From positions 1 through 11,725 of the forward strand of contig NW_021826888.1 in assembly GCF_006345805.1 (NCBI RefSeq): a stretch of DNA of 11,725 nucleotides, given 5' to 3'. The stretch is from Octopus sinensis. Its lineage: Eukaryota. How positions within the stretch are numbered: position 1 is the first letter of the stretch; each line of letters opens with the position of its first letter. Below the pieces are notes generated by a model. The model was given only the letters and a program-made list of their open reading frames with translations, searched no databases and was not told where the DNA came from. Of this stretch, positions 976-9,686 are shown in pieces. The translations under genes and the position numbers were made by a program.

Positions 976-1368
976 CGCAGGTGACTGTGTGGTAAGTAGC
1001 TGCTAACCAACCACATGGTTCCGGGTTCAATCCCACTGCGTGGCATCTTGGGCAAGTGTCTTCTGCTATAGCCCCGGGCCGACCAATGCCTTGTGAGTGG
1101 ATTTGGTAGACGGAAACTGAAAAGAAGCCTGTCGTATATATGTATATATATATATGTATATGTATGTGTGTGTATATGTTTGTGTGTCTGTGTTTGTCCC
1201 TCTAGCATTGCTTGACAACCGATGCTGGTGTGTTTACGTCCCTGTCACGGTTCGGCAAAAGTGACCGACAGAATAAGTCCCGGGGTCGATTTGCTCGACT
1301 AAAGGCGGTGCTCCAGCATGGCCGCAGTCAAATGACTGAAACAAGTAAAAGAGTAAAAGAGTAAAAGA
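976..1368 (+). mobile_element. tRNA-derived SINE family A, copy 1 (octopus-type)
   Basis: A-box-like GTGACTGTGTGG (981-992), B-box-like GGTTCAATCCC (1024-1034), internal TA/TG microsatellite, (GTAAAAGA)3 tail at 1345-1368; homologous to copies at 4859, 5987 and 8671. Confidence 0.93.
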
Positions 1369-1518
1369 ATATATATATTACGGAGATGTACTTGCATAGC
1401 AAGTGATTTGATCTGAGATCGTGTGCTGGAACGAAAACAATTGCAGCGTGGAAGGTGTTTGTAAGCCATTTAAGAAACACACAAAAGCCGTTTGATTCAC
1501 TTCAACTTTTAAGTCTAA

Positions 1519-1569
1519 TTTGTCAAAATATTTTCGTCGCTATAAGACTGCGACCTGTTCACTGACAAA
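1519..1569 (-). ncRNA. Minimal type I hammerhead ribozyme motif, G3-C8 variant
   Basis: Minus strand: TTTGTCA-GTGAACA-G-GTCGC(AGTCTTATA)GCGAC-GAA-AATATT-T-TGACAAA. 7-bp stem I, 5-bp stem II, palindromic stem III, predicted UUU cleavage after 1526. Confidence 0.78.
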
Positions 1570-1591
1570 AATCCGTGATGCAGCACGGATT

Positions 1592-1642
1592 TTTGTCAGT
1601 GAACAGGTCACGGTCTTAAAGCGACGAAAATATTTTGACAAA
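1592..1642 (+). ncRNA. Minimal type I hammerhead ribozyme motif, G3-C8 variant (mirror copy)
   Basis: TTTGTCA(1592-98) GTGAACA(1599-1605) G GTCAC..GCGAC (one mismatch) GAAA(1626-29) ATATT T(1635) TGACAAA(1636-42). Confidence 0.72.
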
Positions 1643-1749
1643 TTAAACTTAAATGTTGAAGTGAATCGAACGGCTTTTGTGTTTTCTTAAATGGCTTACA
1701 AACACCTTCCACGCTGCAATTGTTTATATATATATATATGTATGTATGT

Positions 1750-1859
1750 ATTCGCCATGTTGGATCGCTGAACTTTACAAGTTTTTCTTATTCTCTCTCT
1801 GCTTATTTTCTCTTATTCATTTCTGTTGAAGAGCGTAGGCTCGAAACGTAAAAGACTTT
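1750..1859 (+). mobile_element. Truncated HHR-bearing repeat fragment (probable Penelope-like pLTR), same family as 4355-4531
   Basis: Pyrimidine-rich leader then TTTCTG(T/T)(T/G)GAAGAG(C/G)GTAGGCTCGAAAC...AAAGACTTT, shared with 4405-4443. Confidence 0.65.
1820..1853 (+). ncRNA. Degenerate minimal hammerhead motif (A6 to U)
   Basis: TTT-CTGTTGA-A-GAGC(GTAG)GCTC-GAA-ACGT-A-AAA; stem III palindrome ACGT, GUA triplet, 3-bp stem I. Confidence 0.55.
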
Positions 1860-1942: not shown

Positions 1943-2487
1943 CAGGGGTCATCAAACTATAGCCTGCGAAGTCAGTTCATCCGGCCCGCTGTTGCATTGT
2001 ACCTTTTGTGTAAATACCTGTAATAAAAGTTCATTTGCCTCAGGTATGGCATCAGTGTTTGGAACAACTTATGACTGTGAGCAAACGACGTATGTGAAGT
2101 CAGCACATCGAACAAGCTTGACTGAGGAACATTTCAAAGCAATTCTCTTGGTTGGATGCAGTAATTCCAAAGCAATTCTCTTGGATGGATGCAGCAATTC
2201 CAAAGCAAATATTAATGATATCTTAAAAGCTAAACACCAGTTTCACAAATCTTACTAATCCTTTTTGCTGCTTAGTTTGTGAGATTCGGGTATGTGCGCA
2301 CTGGGGGTGATATAGCCACTTTATTGCTAACGTCGTCTTCTTTGATAACTTTTTGGTGAATAAATATGTTGGTTGTCTTTATTTTTTGTGTATTCACTGT
2401 ATTGTATTGAACAAAAAGGTTATGCGGCCCGCGCTCGGCGTTCACTTAGTTATCAGGTCCGCCGTGAAAAAGGTTTGGTGACCCCTG
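1943..2487 (+). mobile_element. Non-autonomous hAT DNA transposon (Charlie/Buster/SPIN-like)
   Basis: TIRs CAGGGGTCATCAAAC / GTTTGGTGACCCCTG (14/15 match); degenerate 8-bp TSD ATCTAGAC (1935-42) vs AACTAAAC (2488-95), fitting the NTCTAGAN target preference; GGCCCGC subterminal motifs; internal transposase remnant. Confidence 0.9.
2010..2258 (+). pseudogene. C-terminal hAT transposase remnant (dimerisation-domain region)
   Basis: FASGMASVFGTTYDCEQ..KSAHRTSLTEEHF resembles the Buster/SPIN motif FGSTYxCEQxFS..KS.HRS.LTD.HL; no upstream domains; internal 33-bp duplication. Confidence 0.82.
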
Positions 2488-4053: not shown

Positions 4054-4354
4054 CTCTCTGCTGGAGATGACACGTTTGTGGAATTTTGGCGTGGATTACA
4101 ACGCATGCAAGCGACCATATTAATGTATGTGTGTAATGCATGCATAGAAATAAGTACTCATTTTAGGAATTCAAAAGAATTTAAAAGTACACGCACGTAT
4201 GCACACGTGCAAGCACACATTTAATAAATAAAGATAAGAGTAATTTCGAAGCTTTGCCGATGAACAGGTTTATAAGTTAACCACAGGTATATGAAACACC
4301 CACGCAAATGTATAATATACACACACACGCACACATATGTATTTGTGTGTGTAT

Positions 4355-4528
4355 ATACATATCTCTTTATTTTTCTCTATTTTCTCTCCTTGTTTCTATG
4401 TTCCTTTCTGTGGAAGAGGGTAGGCTCGAAACTTTAAAGACTTTTTCACTTCCCGAGCGTTATAGTAATACATCTGTTGGTTGTCTACACCACCTGTCTT
4501 CGTCTTTTGTTTTGTTTTTGTGAATTCT

Positions 4529-4574: not shown

Positions 4575-4855
4575 GAGGTTTTGGTATCCAGAAGATCCAG
4601 AAGGCAGGTAAGGCTATGTAAGTGCTGCGGAAGGTCCGCTGTTAGACTCCCGGTTCGATAATAGTATGAGTGAGGAGACTGAGGCGAGTCGTGTGTGAGC
4701 GTGTATAGGTTAAATAAAATGAGACAACAAAGCTAAGGCAGTGCAAAATTTCTAGAACATTTTTATAAAGAGAAATGTAGTCTTACAGCTGTTTCAGAGA
4801 TATAAAAGATATCCCATCGTCAGATGCAATATTAGAGAGTTTAATGGAAGAAAAT
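4572..4855 (-). mobile_element. Probable Penelope-like terminal fragment carrying a hammerhead motif
   Basis: Non-simple sequence ending (minus strand) at the TA run and containing a canonical HHR core; left boundary clear, right boundary approximate. Confidence 0.55.
4780..4827 (-). ncRNA. Minimal hammerhead motif with canonical core
   Basis: Minus strand: CTGACGA(4823-4817)-T-GGGATAT(CTTTT)ATATCTC-T-GAA-ACAGCTGT-A; 7-bp stem II, 8-nt palindromic stem III, GUA triplet; stem I degenerate (GCAT vs AGAC). Confidence 0.68.
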
Positions 4856-4858
4856 AGT

Positions 4859-5128
4859 AGCCACAGGAGTGGCTGTGTGGTAAGTAGCTTGCTTACCAAC
4901 TACATGGTTCCGGGTTCAGTCCCACTGCGTGGCACTTTGGGCAAGTGTCTTCTACTATAGCCTCGGGCCGACCAATGCCTTGTGAGTGGATTTGGTAGAC
5001 GGAAACTGAAAGAAGCCTGTCGTATATATGTATATATATAAATGTGTGTGTCTGTGTTTGCCCCCTAGCATTGCTTGACAACCGATGCTGGTGTGTTTAT
5101 GTCCCCGTTACTTAGCGGTTCGGCAAAA
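4859..5128 (+). mobile_element. SINE family A, copy 2 (3'-truncated)
   Basis: GGAGTGGCTGTGTGG head, GGTTCAGTCCC B-box, homology stops at CGGCAAAA. Confidence 0.93.
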
Positions 5129-5412
5129 CATGTGTGTATGTGTGTACATATCCATGCATATGCGTGTAGACAGAAAACAAATAAAATTATGAGGGAAGGA
5201 GAAAAGCAAAGGAATATTATATGGAACCAAATAATCGAAACACCTGACTGAAAACGTGTAGAAATATAAACGAAAAGGAGAATCGGGAAGTGTAGAGTAA
5301 AATAATTTTTAAAAAAAGGCCAAAGGGGAAACGCCCCAATGACATCCGTTTACGTAACAAGCTTATATCCGTACAAATAAACACATATAAACACAAATGT
5401 ACATATTACATT

Positions 5413-5414
<2 letters not shown>

Positions 5415-5451
<37 letters not shown>
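5415..5451. repeat. (TA)n microsatellite
   Basis: Pure TA run. Confidence 0.96.
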
Positions 5452-5455
<4 letters not shown>

Positions 5456-5523
5456 TCCAATGAATTTAGGTAAATAATCCTTCGAACAGACGATCGGCAG
5501 CGACGCCTGCTGGATTTGGATGC

Positions 5524-5566
5524 TCTACATTGATAAGGGGCAAATATCCTGAAACTACTCTGTAGA
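5524..5566 (+). ncRNA. Minimal hammerhead-like motif, U3-A8 variant
   Basis: TCTACA-TTGATAA-GGGG(CAAATA)TCCT-GAA-ACTACT-C-TGTAGA; perfect 6-bp stem I; stem III is one base from palindrome ACTAGT; stem II weak (2 GU). Confidence 0.55.
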
Positions 5567-5801: not shown

Positions 5802-5980
5802 TATATATATATATATAATATATATAAATACATACATACATAAATAAACATGCATGCATGTACATATCAATATACATATCTATATGTGTGGTTGTGGGTG
5901 TACGGATATATATTTATATGTATGTGTATATGTGTATGCATATATATGTATATGTATGTATATATATATGTATACATACA
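5802..5980. repeat. Mixed TA/TG/TACA simple repeat
   Basis: Alternating purine-pyrimidine low-complexity tract. Confidence 0.9.
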
Positions 5981-5986
5981 TACCTT

Positions 5987-6405
5987 CTTTTATTCTTCTA
6001 TTCTTTTACTTGTTTCTATCATTTGAGTGCGGCCATGCTGGAGCACAGCCTTGAAGGGTGTTTTTAGTCGGACAAGTCGACTCCAGGAGTTAGCTTTTTA
6101 AACCTAGTATTTACTCTATCGGTCTCATTTGCCGAACCGCTAGATTTCGGGGACGTAAACACACTAACACCGGTAGTCAAGCGGTGATGGGGTGGGGGGC
6201 GGCAAACGCAAACACAAAGACACGCACACGTACATACATACATACATACATACGTACATACATACATACCAAATCCACTCACAAGTATTTGGCCGGCTTG
6301 AGGCTACAGTAGAAGACATTTGCCCAAGGTATCACGCAGTGGGTCTGAAACCGGAACCATGTGGTTGGAAAGCAAGCTTCTTACCACACAGCCACACCAG
6401 CGCCT
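5987..6405 (-). mobile_element. SINE family A, copy 3 (divergent subfamily, internal deletion)
   Basis: Minus-strand head AGGCGCTGGTGTGGCTGTGTGGTAAG, degenerate tail at 5987-6010, internal (TACA)n, lacks the GACGGGCTTC...CGTC block seen in copy 4. Confidence 0.9.
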
Positions 6406-7476
6406 ATCCACACAGCCATATATTCGTATATGTGGATTATAACACTTTCTTAACTCACCCAGAGTAAATTCTGTTGCATTTTTATAAGGCTGCAAATCTT
6501 TTCTTTACAAATCACACGACAGTAATTTAAGTCTTCCGAACCGTAAAGTTACTTCGAGACCTGCGGCTCTCTACTGAGTATCTATGAATTTTTTCTTTAC
6601 GACTTCGTTCTGTTGTCATTTTTATAGCTATTTTGGGTTAAGCCAGTTTATTATACTTTATCACCCGATCTTACAGAGCTGTTGTTGATATTTATATTGA
6701 TAGTTGGTCTGTGATCACCTCTTGCGTTGGAATTTAATACGTCAATAGAGGATGTCCTGCAATTATCGTCTGTTGATGTCCGGTTACTGACATTAGATAT
6801 TTTGTCCAGGTTTTCACTCATTCTCTCTTTTTTTTTCTGAATATACATGATGGTTTATCTCAATGTTATGTATTTTAGAGAATTTAGTTTCTCGGTTTCC
6901 ATTTATTTAGATCTTAAGCTGATATCATTTTCTCACTGATAGATATTCGCTATCTTTTCAGGATATATATTTTTTGCCTGTGGCAATGGCAGTTCAGCGC
7001 TGTGAGAGATAACACATTTGTATTAAGAACAACTCTTTCTACATAGTGAATACCTCTGATGAATCTGCAATCTAGAATGTTCCTATAACTTCGGTAGTTT
7101 TATACACGTGTGTGTCAGAAAGTTGATACAAGCTATACAAGTTTTATGTTTTTTTTTTCGCCCTTGAGTCTCATCCAAACCCAGTGATTTAAATCATTTC
7201 GTTTTCATTTGGATCTTTGCATGAAACATCAGCAAAACTTACTTTAGGTTAGGAGCTGAATGTAATACTGTTTTTTTCTCAACCTGTTGTAAATATTACA
7301 CTGGTATATTGTGGCACAATTTGCACATCTAATCCTGTTTGAATATTTCAGTGTCGTCTACTTGCCTAAAGATTACGAACGTATTTATTTCCTTCAGGCA
7401 AATTCGATAATACGATGATAAAACTAACCGCGTTTCATTGCATGGGATTTGTTACATATAATAACATTGCCAGCAG

Positions 7477-8463: not shown

Positions 8464-8663
8464 CACAGCAGGCTAGCAAGTTCAGGGGAGGGGTAGGCCG
8501 AGTATACCGACTACAATGCTCAATTGGTATTTATTTCATCGATCCCGAAAGGATGAAAGGCAAAGTCGACCTCGGTAGAATTTGAACTCAGAATATAATG
8601 ACGGACGAAATGCCGATAAGTATTTTATCCGGCGTGCTAACGATTCTGCCAGCTCGCCGCCTT
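8464..8663 (-). mobile_element. tRNA-derived SINE family B
   Basis: Minus strand: AAGGCGGCGAGCTGGCAGAATCG (A-box), GAGTTCAAATTC (B-box), central GACTTTGCCTTTCATCCTTTCGGGATCGAT; 3' boundary approximate. Confidence 0.88.
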
Positions 8664-8670
8664 AGATTCA

Positions 8671-9107
8671 TTTACTCTTTTACTCTTTTTACTCTTTTAC
8701 TCGTTTCAGTCATTTTGACTGCGGCCATGCTGGAGCACCGACTTTAGTCGAGCAAATCGACCCCAGGACTAACTTTTTGTAAGCCTAGTACTTATTCTAT
8801 CGGTCTCTTTTGCCGAACCGCTAGGTACGGGGACGCAAACACACCACAATCGGTTTCTCAAGCGATGTTGGGGGGGGGGACAAACACAAACACACAAACA
8901 TACACACACATACATACATATATATATGTATATATGCATATATACGACGGGCTTCTTTCAGTTTCCGTCTACCAAATCCACTCACAAGGCTTTGATCGGC
9001 CCTAGGCTATAGTAGAAGACACTTGCCCAAGGTGCCCCGCAGTGGGAATGAACCCGGAACCATGTGGTTGGTAAGCTAGCTTCTTACCACACAGCCACTC
9101 TTGCGCC
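8671..9107 (-). mobile_element. SINE family A, copy 4 (full length)
   Basis: Minus-strand head GGCGCAAGAGTGGCTGTGTGG, B-box GGTTCATTCCC, internal microsatellite 8881-8944, tail read as (TTTTACTC)n on plus. Confidence 0.94.
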
Positions 9108-9686
9108 ATTTATTAACTTTGTTTTTTATTACTAGTCTTCTGAATGAAGATAAACATTCCTTCTCACCCAATAACTTCTTTACTTTCATTCGGCAAAAAA
9201 AAAAAAAAAAAATGAGGCCCTGGATTTATTTTGCAAAGCTTACATATCTCAAGCAAGTCATTGATTTATTCTTGTCATTACATTATCCTTGCCAATAAGA
9301 AATCTCGGGCTTAAAGATAGGAAATTATTGGGATTAGATACTTCTCTTTCAACCACAAGAAATCTCGCTAAAATGCTCTTCCCTATCATCATAACCCTTT
9401 AGATATTCCCTTTTAATGTATTTTAATTTGCTGTACTTCAACCCCAAACGGCAATTCCATAAAATTTACAGCTTAGTTATCTCAGATTATTTCATTTACG
9501 GGAAAGAATTCGGCCATTTATTGGAAATATGTTTGTTGCATGGTTAAACTTCTTCGGAGAGCTTTGATGCCGGGACTTCTCTAAGAGTGGTGAAGAGAAA
9601 ATCAATTTCATTTTTAGATGATAATTTAGTAACTTTCGAAATCCACCGGAGATTTAATATTGGCTGCAATTTCTTTCTATAACACC

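What the first reader, a model, noticed from the sequence alone, without database searches (positions are those of the whole stretch)
1435..1725. 291-bp palindrome encoding twin hammerhead ribozymes, one per strand, with a G3-C8 swapped core
Seen: each arm, read outward from the centre (1580/1581), gives stem I TTTGTCA/TGACAAA, core GUGAACA, stem II GTCGC/GCGAC, GAAA, palindromic stem III AATATT and a UUU site, in exact type I spacing. Known: the HHR core is CUGANGA, C3-G8 form a tertiary Watson-Crick pair whose compensatory swaps retain activity, and minimal HHRs with palindromic stem III occur in Penelope-like elements and cleave as dimers. A CUGANGA pattern search would miss this motif. Inference: a read-through transcript would fold into a ~145-bp hairpin that sequesters the ribozyme, so only RNAs starting near the centre could cleave. 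Sense and antisense RNAs share the same stem III and could form an intermolecular double hammerhead, making this a candidate bidirectional self-gating ribozyme cassette.
Basis: partly seen in the sequence, partly recalled or inferred. Interest (0 to 1): 0.9.

Follow-up and report, generated by a model that had tools for sequence, protein, structure and literature searches.

The report
Dead Penelope retrotransposon pair with variant hammerheads
The palindrome is two short, head-to-head copies of an octopus Penelope-like retrotransposon stuck in a TA repeat, each carrying that element family's minimal hammerhead ribozyme motif with a naturally swapped core base pair (G3-C8); it is a transposon relic, not a purpose-built ribozyme switch.

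Summary
Bases 1435-1725 form a 94.5%-identical palindrome. Each arm, read outward, carries UUUGUCA|GUGAACA|G|GUCGC-loop-GCGAC|GAA|AAUAUU|U|UGACAAA.

The arms are the last ~145-205 nt of a ~4.37-kb Penelope-like element (PLE), found here in Octopus vulgaris. [quoted passage not shown] Its insertions sit in (TA)n, with inverted 5'-truncated partners and a one-sided "tail". Window 1379-1434 is that tail.

The motif lies 49 nt upstream of the element's ORF. All seven octopus copies keep G3-C8. At the same position upstream of homologous ORFs:
- two other lineages also have G3-C8;
- two have canonical C3-G8;
- stems I and II covary (52/55 cells paired; 0/5000 shuffles reach that).

So this is a genuine PLE minimal hammerhead with a natural 3-8 swap. 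I found the swap reported only as an engineered, partly active double mutant.

The "bidirectional self-gating cassette" reading is not supported. An independent O. vulgaris locus has the same head-to-head pair. The arms lack their upstream promoter region, differ about equally inside and outside the motif, and would fold into a -227 kcal/mol hairpin. Catalysis is untested.

The parts
990..1378 (+). SINE-like repeat with an internal microsatellite and a (GTAAAAGA)n tail. It is context only: the insertion lies just 3' of it.
   Evidence: Four copies in the window align with one another. ARAGORN finds no tRNA.
1369..1378 (.). Left remnant of the (TA)n target microsatellite.
   Evidence: Read directly from the sequence. 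The O. vulgaris copies are also flanked by (TA)n on both sides.
1379..1434 (-). 'Tail': an extra 3' extension of the left copy, covering ORF nt ~36-93 of the element (element positions ~4314-4372). The outer end is ambiguous by 1-3 nt because it overlaps the TA repeat.
   Evidence: It encodes ...FRSSTRSQIKSLAMQVHLRN. This matches the N-termini of O. bimaculoides A0A0L8I3W9 (22/24 from Met1) and A0A0L8I923. It aligns to O. vulgaris copies that end ...CATCTCCGTAAT.
1435..1576 (-). Left arm: an inverted copy of the element's 3'-terminal region (element positions ~4173-4313).
   Evidence: blastn to L001 element 4168-4372, 92.8% identity; alignment A4.
1519..1569 (-). Left minimal hammerhead motif with a G3-C8 core and an intact stem II. 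Predicted cleavage is between 1526 and 1525.
1467..1469 (-). ATG of the element's ORF in the left copy.
1577..1725 (+). Right arm: a copy of element positions ~4166-4313, without a tail. It ends at ORF nt 35.
   Evidence: blastn to L001, 93.3% identity; alignment A4.
1592..1642 (+). Right minimal hammerhead motif with a G3-C8 core. Stem II carries an A.C mismatch (GUCAC/GCGAC). Predicted cleavage is between 1635 and 1636.
1691..1693 (+). ATG of the element's ORF in the right copy, 49 nt after the end of stem I.
1726..1752 (.). Right remnant of the (TA)n(TGTA)n target microsatellite.

Best explanation
Bases ~1379-1725 are one old, dead insertion of a Penelope-like retrotransposon (PLE) into a (TA)n microsatellite.

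Anatomy (shown):
- The insertion is two very short cDNA copies of the element's 3'-terminal region joined head to head.
- Their 3' ends, the reverse-transcription start sites, face outward. Their 5' ends meet at 1576/1577.
- The left copy started at the distal start site and so carries the ~55-nt 'tail'. The right copy started at the proximal site.
- Each copy includes the element's minimal type I hammerhead, which lies in the pseudo-LTR 49 nt upstream of the ORF start.

Hammerhead core (shown):
- In this element family the core is GUGAACA, that is G3...C8 in place of C3...G8.
- This keeps the tertiary Watson-Crick 3-8 pair.
- The swap is fixed in all seven copies seen, and it recurs in related PLE lineages.

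How the ribozyme would work (inferred):
- In an active tandem element, two copies of the motif on a pLTR-ORF-pLTR transcript would pair through the palindromic AAUAUU to build helix III.
- Cleavage would fall after U17, probably slowly and with help from the element's protein.

How the pair arose (inferred):
- It is a footprint of target-primed reverse transcription from both cut DNA strands.
- The template was a short capped pLTR transcript that begins at element position 4165.

At this locus nothing is selected: the structure is a relic.
For: 1. Family membership.
- The ORF that starts at the ATG inside each arm and runs through the 'tail' matches the N-terminus of Octopus bimaculoides proteins from residue 1.
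- Their relative P0003 led to O. vulgaris locus L001. There the arm sequence (93% identity) is the 3' end of a 4372-bp copy flanked by (TA)n, which ends with the same ...CATCTCCGTAAT as the window's left copy.

2. PLE identity.
- The L001 ORF has RT motifs. NCBIfam RT families hit at E=5e-5, and at E=3e-6 for the L003 homologue. A profile hits a solved reverse transcriptase at E=9e-4 across motifs B-C including YVDD.
- A CX3CxxC linker and a VYQIKC...C...YISETSRS..R..EH block follow. This is the PLE GIY-YIG pattern with two cysteines inside the core, as described in PMC8557442.
- L003 shows tandem units with a hammerhead at each junction.
- L002 shows an inverted 5'-truncated copy abutting a long copy.
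- In all three inverted pairs, one arm has the tail and the other does not.

3. Hammerhead.
- The motif has all four hallmarks of PLE min-HHRs that the 2014 descriptor did not impose: a nucleotide between 9 and 10.1, G10.1-C11.1, a palindromic helix III, and family covariation.
- Five further O. vulgaris copies are identical and keep G3-C8.
- Motifs sit 44-56 nt upstream of homologous ORFs in four other contigs. Two have G3-C8 (L006, L008) and two have C3-G8 (L003, L007).
- Over stems I and II and the 3-8 pair, 52/55 cells pair, 8/11 pairs show compensatory change, and 0/5000 shuffles reach the observed pairing.
- The relaxed descriptor hits random sequence only 0.015 times per kb per strand.

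4. Activity precedent.
- In the Anolis PLE hammerhead, C3G or G8C alone abolishes cleavage, and the C3G/G8C double mutant partly restores it (PMC11167929).

5. Integration.
- The same paper reports that the PLE protein cleaves and extends both DNA strands, and that the 'tail' is the stretch between two internal RT start sites.
- In the independent short pair at L002 32310-32666, both arms start at position 4165, each with one extra G that the long copies do not template.
- That position is 24-30 nt downstream of TATATAT in the long copies.
Against: - No cleavage assay exists for this sequence. PLE min-HHRs are poor catalysts in vitro. The G3-C8 swap only partly rescues activity.
- Hammerhead cleavage was dispensable for PLE insertion in vitro. 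The arms themselves span the cleavage site, so their template RNA was uncleaved.
- Pfam found neither RVT_1 nor GIY-YIG in the ORFs. The endonuclease call rests on motif reading only (one search found nothing).
- The covariation alignment was built from descriptor hits and therefore leans towards the structure. The 3-8 pair alone is weak evidence: 12/120 permutations keep all five lineages paired.
- The transcription start, cap-G and two-strand priming steps rest on two short pairs and three long copies.
- The window's own junction lacks about 11-12 nt relative to the L002 pair.
- The species of the window is not established, only that it is Octopus-like.
Confidence: 0.85

Rival explanations
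1. The palindrome is a functional, selected cassette. Outward transcripts from the centre each fold into a hammerhead and pair with each other through helix III. Read-through transcripts are silenced by the 145-bp hairpin.
For: Both arms keep every core nucleotide. The read-through hairpin is extremely stable, at -227 kcal/mol. A second locus has the same arrangement.
Against: - The arrangement is the known by-product of PLE integration.
- Both arms begin at the putative transcription start, so neither has its upstream TATA region.
- Divergence between the arms is about the same inside the motif (3/51) as outside it (5/95). It includes an uncompensated stem II mismatch.
- The AAUAUU duplex is worth -0.2 kcal/mol. 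The competing 10-bp A/U duplex (-6.2 kcal/mol) would sequester A13, A14 and U17.
- Outward sense transcripts from the two arms would also be largely complementary to each other.
Confidence: 0.03
2. The short head-to-head dimer is itself a propagating non-autonomous unit. A read-through hairpin transcript would be reverse-transcribed as a whole by PLE protein from the RT start site in its 3' arm. The window and L002 32.3-32.7 kb would then share their junction by descent, not by independent formation.
For: Two unrelated loci have the same junction position (~4165) and the same asymmetry of tailed and untailed arms. Both lie in (TA)n.
Against: - Only two instances were seen.
- The extra G on each arm at the L002 centre fits two separate capped templates better.
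- A 145-bp RNA hairpin is a poor RT template.
- The long inverted pair in L002 (truncated at 2520 and 137) shows that pairs form de novo.
Confidence: 0.1
3. The palindrome is a foldback or MITE-type DNA transposon, and the hammerhead resemblance is a coincidence.
For: It is a long, near-perfect inverted repeat with TA-rich flanks. Rfam matches only generic (MITE-like) miRNA hairpin families and no hammerhead family.
Against: - The arms are collinear with the 3' end of a 4.37-kb RT-encoding element.
- There is no target-site duplication at the palindrome borders, and no terminal inverted repeat once the tail is included.
- The window holds no other copy of the arm.
- The motif covaries across homologous positions.
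- Rfam also misses the canonical-core relative, so its silence carries no weight.
Confidence: 0.02

Closest known systems
Minimal hammerhead ribozymes of metazoan Penelope-like elements (Cervera & de la Pena 2014, PMC4209133)
   Same: Type I topology. Helix III is absent or reduced to a palindromic AAUAUU. There is an unpaired nucleotide between A9 and 10.1, a G10.1-C11.1 pair, and a short helix I. The motif sits in the pseudo-LTR, and dual motifs occur on opposite strands 100-700 bp apart. Dimerisation is expected to be required.
   Different: The core is GUGAACA (G3-C8). That paper and Perreault et al. 2011 (PMC3088659) report only C3-G8 and the U3-A8 covariant in nature. Stem II here is 5 bp, against the 7-8 bp typical of Schistosoma.
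Engineered C3G/G8C double mutant of the Anolis Poseidon (PAc) hammerhead (PMC11167929), based on Martick & Scott 2006
   Same: The same base swap in the same kind of ribozyme. It partly restores the cleavage that either single mutant loses.
   Different: That one is a laboratory mutant. Here the swap is the natural, fixed state of a family and of at least two other lineages.
Canonical PLE insertion anatomy (Neptune/Nematis-type, C-terminal GIY-YIG; Craig et al. 2021, PMC8557442)
   Same: 5' truncation, an inverted 5'-truncated partner, a tail at one end only, insertion into (TA)n, a CX2-5CxxC linker upstream of the GIY-YIG core, and two cysteines inside it.
   Different: Both partners here are extremely short (~145 and ~200 nt) and end at the same 5' position. 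The tail is ~55-60 nt rather than 30-40. The clade was not placed by phylogeny.
Metazoan non-LTR retrozymes (Cervera & de la Pena 2020, PMC7229834; bioRxiv 10.64898/2026.07.22.740005)
   Same: Short non-coding units that carry a type I hammerhead and derive from PLE pseudo-LTRs.
   Different: Retrozymes are direct tandem repeats that yield circular RNAs. This is a single inverted pair with no tandem partner. A separate retrozyme-like repeat was noticed elsewhere in the window.

Membership tests
Hammerhead ribozyme (PLE minimal type I) | Invariant core nucleotides U4 G5 A6, A9, G12 A13 A14, A15.1-U16.1, and H17 not G | tested here: met
   GUGAACA ... GAA A...U U is present in both arms.
Hammerhead ribozyme (PLE minimal type I) | C at position 3 and G at position 8 | tested here: not met
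   Positions 3 and 8 are G and C in both window arms and in 5/5 O. vulgaris copies.
Hammerhead ribozyme (PLE minimal type I) | Watson-Crick complementarity of positions 3 and 8 (the tertiary pair) | tested here: met
   Five lineages show G-C, C-G, G-C, C-G, G-C and none is unpaired. On its own this is weak: 12/120 permutations keep all five paired.
Hammerhead ribozyme (PLE minimal type I) | Helices I and II supported by covariation | tested here: met
   52/55 cells pair, 8/11 pairs show double-sided changes, and 0/5000 shuffles reach the observed value. The alignment came from descriptor hits and so leans towards the structure. Their position 44-56 nt upstream of homologous ORFs is independent of the descriptor.
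Hammerhead ribozyme (PLE minimal type I) | PLE-type hallmarks: a nucleotide between 9 and 10.1, G10.1-C11.1, and a palindromic helix III | tested here: met
   Bulged G, G10.1-C11.1 and AAUAUU are all present. The criteria come from PMC4209133.
Hammerhead ribozyme (PLE minimal type I) | Match to an Rfam hammerhead covariance model | tested here: not met
   No hammerhead family matched at E<=10. This is uninformative, because the canonical-core relative in L003 and the U3-A8 tandem motif in L002 are missed too.
Hammerhead ribozyme (PLE minimal type I) | Site-specific self-cleavage | not testable with these tools
   This needs in vitro transcription and cleavage of dimeric constructs.
Penelope-like element | Reverse transcriptase domain | tested here: met
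   NCBIfam Drt2/Drt3a/retron RT families hit at E=3e-6 to 5e-5. A profile hits PDB 9yfd_A, a solved reverse transcriptase, at E=9e-4 over motifs B-C. YVDD is present. Pfam RVT_1 did not hit. A telomerase-like clade was not tested.
Penelope-like element | GIY-YIG endonuclease with two cysteines inside the core (CCHH) and, in Neptune/Nematis, a CX2-5CxxC linker | tested here: inconclusive
   The motifs can be read in the translations and are conserved between L001 and L003. No Pfam or PDB profile hit was found.
Penelope-like element | Pseudo-LTR or tandem organisation with the hammerhead in the repeat | tested here: met
   L003 has two identical hammerheads 3323 bp apart flanking the ORFs. The L001 copy is longer than one unit, with a 28-nt terminal redundancy.
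Penelope-like element | Inverted 5'-truncated partner copy and a tail at one end only | tested here: met
   Seen in the window, at L002 32.3-32.7 kb and at L002 24.2-30.1 kb.
Foldback / MITE DNA transposon | Terminal inverted repeats bounded by a target-site duplication, with multiple dispersed copies | tested here: not met
   There is no target-site duplication at 1434/1435 and 1725/1726. With the tail included, the ends are not inverted repeats. The window has no other copy.
Non-LTR retrozyme | Direct tandem repeats, each with a type I hammerhead | tested here: not met
   Only an inverted pair is present at this locus.

The most novel reading that the evidence does not exclude
G3-C8 is a functional, repeatedly evolved natural state of the Penelope-type hammerhead. 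Censuses based on CUGANGA or UUGANAA would then systematically undercount these ribozymes. The short head-to-head pairs, with each arm starting at one defined position plus an untemplated G, would be in vivo footprints of symmetric reverse transcription primed from both cut DNA strands on a capped pseudo-LTR transcript. So far that behaviour has been seen only in vitro, for one lizard element.
Probability: 0.35. Interest if true: 0.55.

Novelty: new variant of a known kind. Interest (0 to 1): 0.4.

Why it matters
For ribozyme biology, a natural G3-C8 state would be phylogenetic evidence for the C3-G8 tertiary pair that goes beyond the known U3-A8 covariant. Here it is fixed in one family and present in at least two other lineages whose relatives keep C3-G8. 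It also shows that descriptor searches with a fixed core miss whole families.

For transposon biology, these very short two-copy insertions with defined 5' and 3' ends give a simple genomic readout of three things in Penelope-like elements: where transcription starts, where reverse transcription starts, and whether both target strands prime synthesis.

For this locus itself the result is deflationary. It is a decayed insertion with no sign of a host function.

Tried and rejected
- **Rfam, whole window and 1400-1760 at E<=10.** No hammerhead family matched, only generic miRNA-hairpin matches. This was later shown to be uninformative.
- **Other copies of the arm within the window.** None found.
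- **Protein search with the central ORF 1520-1690.** Nothing found.
- **Exact look-up of ten window ORFs.** None is in the collection.
- **Metagenome scan for the motif.** 0 hits.
- **Pfam on window ORFs, including the hAT-like-looking ORF 1992-2258.** Nothing significant.
- **Contigs encoding P0001 and P0002.** Not on record.
- **Pfam on the PLE ORFs and PDB searches with the single ORF and with the EN profile.** No hits. The RT was detected only with NCBIfam and with a profile search.
- **Contigs L004/L005 and L009.** No recognisable hammerhead upstream of the ORF. L009 lacks the ORF start.
- **Literature.** Searches for a natural G3-C8 hammerhead found only engineered mutants. Lunse, Weinberg & Breaker 2017 (PMC5785218) is not held, so I could not check whether it lists this variant.
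- **Splice-acceptor reading of ...tttcttAG| at position 4165.** Considered and set aside, because a spliced RNA would carry an upstream exon rather than end there.
Full report
**1. Observation**

Window 1435-1580 and 1581-1725 align as reverse complements with seven mismatches and one indel, about 94.5% identity. Read outward from the centre, each arm contains:

UUUGUCA | GUGAACA | G | GUCGC-(9 nt)-GCGAC | GAA | AAUAUU | U | UGACAAA

This lies at 1592-1642 on the + strand and 1519-1569 on the - strand.

- An unpaired G sits between A9 and stem II.
- The right arm has GUCAC rather than GUCGC, which gives an A.C mismatch.

As a monomer the motif folds into stems I and II as its minimum-energy structure, at -13.0 kcal/mol (left) and -8.4 kcal/mol (right).

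**2. More than chance?**

I wrote a descriptor for the Penelope-type minimal hammerhead. It requires stem I >= 5 bp, N3-UGA-N-N8-A with N3/N8 complementary, a bulge of 0-1 nt, stem II >= 4 bp, GAAA, a palindromic helix III, H17 and closure of stem I.
- In the window it finds only the left-arm motif.
- In 20 Mb of random sequence with the window's dinucleotide composition it finds 1-2 hits, and none with stems as long as here.
- The expectation for an 11.7-kb window is of the order of 1e-4 to 2e-3.

No Rfam hammerhead family matched, even at E<=10. Rfam also fails on a canonical-core relative and on a U3-A8 tandem motif, so that negative result carries no weight.

**3. What the arms are**

The window has no other copy of the arm, and a first protein search with the central ORF found nothing. 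The lead came from two papers:
- Cervera & de la Pena 2014 (PMC4209133) describe metazoan Penelope-like-element (PLE) minimal hammerheads. These lack helix III, have a palindromic 15.2-16.2, an extra nucleotide between 9 and 10.1, and G10.1-C11.1. Dual motifs occur on opposite strands 100-700 bp apart, and a U3-A8 core covariant exists.
- Craig et al. 2021 (PMC8557442) describe PLE insertions. They are 5'-truncated, often have an inverted 5'-truncated copy adjacent, carry a short 'tail' at one end only, and some clades prefer (TA)n.

The window shows (TA)n on both sides of [about 55 nt + palindrome].

I translated the three frames of the left copy beyond the motif and searched them together.
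- The frame starting at the ATG at 1469 (- strand; 1691 on the + strand) gives MAYKHLPRCNCFRSSTRSQIKSLAMQVHLRN.
- It matches residues 1-24 of Octopus bimaculoides A0A0L8I3W9 (22/24 identical).
- It continues into the start of A0A0L8I923, which begins MQVHLRNSESL....

The 55 nt outside the palindrome (1379-1434) are therefore element sequence. The element has an ORF that begins 49 nt after the hammerhead.

**4. The parent element**

A full HMMER scan with that protein found O. vulgaris CAI9726376 and several metagenomic relatives. Their contigs could be fetched.

In O. vulgaris locus L001:
- The window's left copy aligns at 92.7% identity to 14017-14219.
- That stretch is the 3' end of a 4372-bp copy (9848-14219) flanked by (TA)n on both sides.
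- The copy ends with the same ...CATCTCCGTAAT as the window's left copy.

Between the N-terminal ORF and that end lies a 560-codon ORF.
- It has RT motifs, including YVDD.
- It has a C-QSN-C-AV-C linker.
- It has GTVYQIKCQEGAC...YISETSRSINDRFKEH.

It is about 50% identical to ORFs in L003 and P0012.

Tool support for the domains is uneven.
- Pfam found nothing.
- NCBIfam reverse-transcriptase families hit at E=5e-5 for L001 and 3e-6 for L003.
- A four-sequence profile hit a solved reverse transcriptase at E=9e-4 across motifs B-C.
- The endonuclease is supported only by the motif pattern that Craig et al. give for PLE GIY-YIG domains: two cysteines between GIY and YIG, with an upstream CX2-5CxxC linker in Neptune/Nematis.

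Other PLE features were also seen.
- L003 carries tandem units with identical hammerheads 3323 bp apart.
- In L002 an inverted copy truncated at position 2520 abuts a copy truncated at position 137.

Together this is the anatomy of a C-terminal-endonuclease PLE. I did not run a phylogeny, so the clade is not assigned.

**5. Anatomy of the insertion in the window**

In element coordinates:
- The right arm is 4166-4313 (window 1577-1725, + strand).
- The left copy is about 4173-4372 (window 1576 down to about 1379, - strand).

Both 3' ends face outward. They coincide with the two 3' ends seen in O. vulgaris copies...GCAATTGT(TT) and ...CTCCGTAAT.

Frangieh et al. 2024 (PMC11167929) showed for an Anolis PLE that reverse transcription starts at two internal sites in the 5' part of the ORF, and that the 'tail' is the stretch between them. 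Here the two ends are at ORF nt 35 and about 90-93.

In all three inverted pairs available, one arm is tailed and the other is not (window; L002 32.3-32.7 kb; L002 24.2-30.1 kb). With three pairs this is only an observation.

**6. An independent twin**

L002 32310-32517 (- strand, positions 4165-4372) and 32520-32666 (+ strand, 4165-4311) form the same short head-to-head pair in (TA)n. Their flanks are unrelated to the window's.

Its centre reads ...GCATCT-C|G-AGATGC.... Each arm starts at A4165 preceded by one G, where the long copies have T (...CTT|AGATGCAG). In the three long copies TATATAT lies 24-30 nt upstream of A4165.

My inference, not shown:
- A4165 is the transcription start in the pseudo-LTR.
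- The extra G is the known signature of reverse transcription reaching a capped 5' end. This point rests on my own knowledge of LINE-1 insertions.
- The head-to-head pair arises because both cut target strands prime reverse transcription. [quoted passage not shown]

The window's centre is 11-12 nt shorter than the L002 centre. Either its two cDNAs stopped at 4166 and 4173, or the palindrome later lost its centre.

**7. Is the G3-C8 hammerhead real?**

All five O. vulgaris copies carry the identical 50-nt motif with GUGAACA. They differ from the window only in loop II and in one base next to stem I.

Upstream of homologous ORFs in other contigs, 44-56 nt before the ATG, I found:

| Contig | Motif |
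|---|---|
| L003 | AAUUCUCA\|CUGAGGA\|G\|GUUGCC-GAGG-GGCAAC\|GAA\|AAUU\|U\|UGAGGAUU |
| L007 | AUGAA\|CUGAAGA\|G\|GGAACC-GGAG-GGUUCC\|GAA\|AUUAU\|U\|UUCAU |
| L006 | GUAGUA\|GUGAUCA\|G\|GAACCG-AAG-CGGUUC\|GAA\|AGUACU\|A\|UACAAU |
| L008 | UACUA\|GUGAACA\|A\|GUGCCA-GUUAG-UGGCUC\|GAA\|AGCU\|U\|UAGAA |

The L007 register was refined by hand.

So three lineages have G3-C8, two have C3-G8, and none has a non-complementary combination. Over eleven pairs (3-8, five pairs of stem II, five of stem I):
- 52 of 55 cells pair.
- 8 pairs show double-sided changes.
- No shuffle out of 5000 reaches the observed pairing.

Two caveats apply. The rows were found with a structure descriptor, and the 3-8 pair alone would survive 12 of 120 permutations. 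Against that, the relaxed descriptor hits random sequence only 0.015 times per kb per strand, and the hits lie at the expected place on the expected strand.

The same C3G/G8C swap, engineered into the Anolis PLE hammerhead, partly restores the cleavage that either single change abolishes. The natural covariant reported so far is U3-A8. In the searchable literature I found G3-C8 only as an engineered mutant. I could not read Lunse et al. 2017.

**8. Does the palindrome do anything here?**

I found no evidence that it does.
- The arms differ at 3 of 51 positions inside the motif and 5 of 95 outside it. One of the three breaks a stem II pair without compensation.
- Each arm begins at the putative start site and therefore lacks the upstream TATA region.
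- A read-through RNA folds into a -226.9 kcal/mol hairpin (z = -35), against -13 kcal/mol for the ribozyme fold.
- The productive six-base helix III duplex is worth -0.2 kcal/mol. A competing ten-base A/U duplex (-6.2 kcal/mol) would bury A13, A14 and U17.
- PLE minimal hammerheads cleave poorly even as dimers. The Anolis one needed protein and was dispensable for insertion.
- The arms span the cleavage site, so their own templates were uncleaved.

The 'self-gating cassette' is thus an over-reading of a standard insertion scar.

**9. Verdict**

The finding is real and correctly recognised as a Penelope-type minimal hammerhead with a swapped 3-8 pair. The locus is a dead two-copy insertion of an octopus PLE.

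Two things are new relative to what I could find:
- The natural, recurrent G3-C8 core.
- More tentatively, the defined-end head-to-head pairs as a footprint of how these elements integrate.

Catalysis, the transcription start and the two-strand priming model are untested inferences.

Noticed in passing
window 5521-5566 (+); related: L002 16845-16961 and 17208-17324 (-): A second, unrelated hammerhead-like motif is present: CUCUACA|UUGAUAA|GGGG-CAAAUA-UCCU|GAA|ACUACU|C|UGUAGA. It has a U3-A8 core, and helix III is no longer palindromic. Window 5450-5565 is 78% identical to a 363-bp tandem repeat in O. vulgaris that carries an intact version, GCUGCA|UUGAAAA|GGGG-CAAUA-CCCC|GAA|AUGCAU|C|UGUAGC. 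This looks like a non-LTR retrozyme with the U3-A8 covariant core. Rfam does not detect it.
   Followed up: partly
window 990-1385 (+), 4840-5130 (+), 5965-6420 (-), 8660-9130 (-): Four copies of a ~380-430-bp SINE-like repeat with an internal TA/TG microsatellite and a (GTAAAAGA)n tail. ARAGORN finds no tRNA-like head. The PLE insertion lies in the TA repeat directly 3' of the first copy.
   Followed up: partly
L002 24197-30123 and 32310-32666: Two separate insertions of the same PLE family lie within 8 kb of each other in O. vulgaris, both in TA-rich microsatellites. In each inverted pair the - strand arm carries the tail and the + strand arm does not.
   Followed up: partly
L001 13182-13990: The element's 3' untranslated region contains a long (CATA)n/(CA)n-type microsatellite, just upstream of the TATATAT and of position 4165.
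   Followed up: no
window 1992-2258 (+): An 88-codon ORF ends ...RTSLTEEHFKAILLVG...ILKAKHQFHKSY. By eye it resembles the C-terminal part of hAT-type transposase relatives. Pfam found nothing, and the exact sequence is not in the protein collection.
   Followed up: partly
L004 1-121 and L005 1-129: Two marine-metagenome contigs encode a close relative of the PLE ORF. They show no recognisable hammerhead in the ~120 nt upstream. Instead there is a 7-bp hairpin, CUGGAUC-AGUUCGA-GAUCCAG, and a GAAACGAAAGG stretch. The motif may lie beyond the contig end, or this lineage may have a different structure.
   Followed up: no
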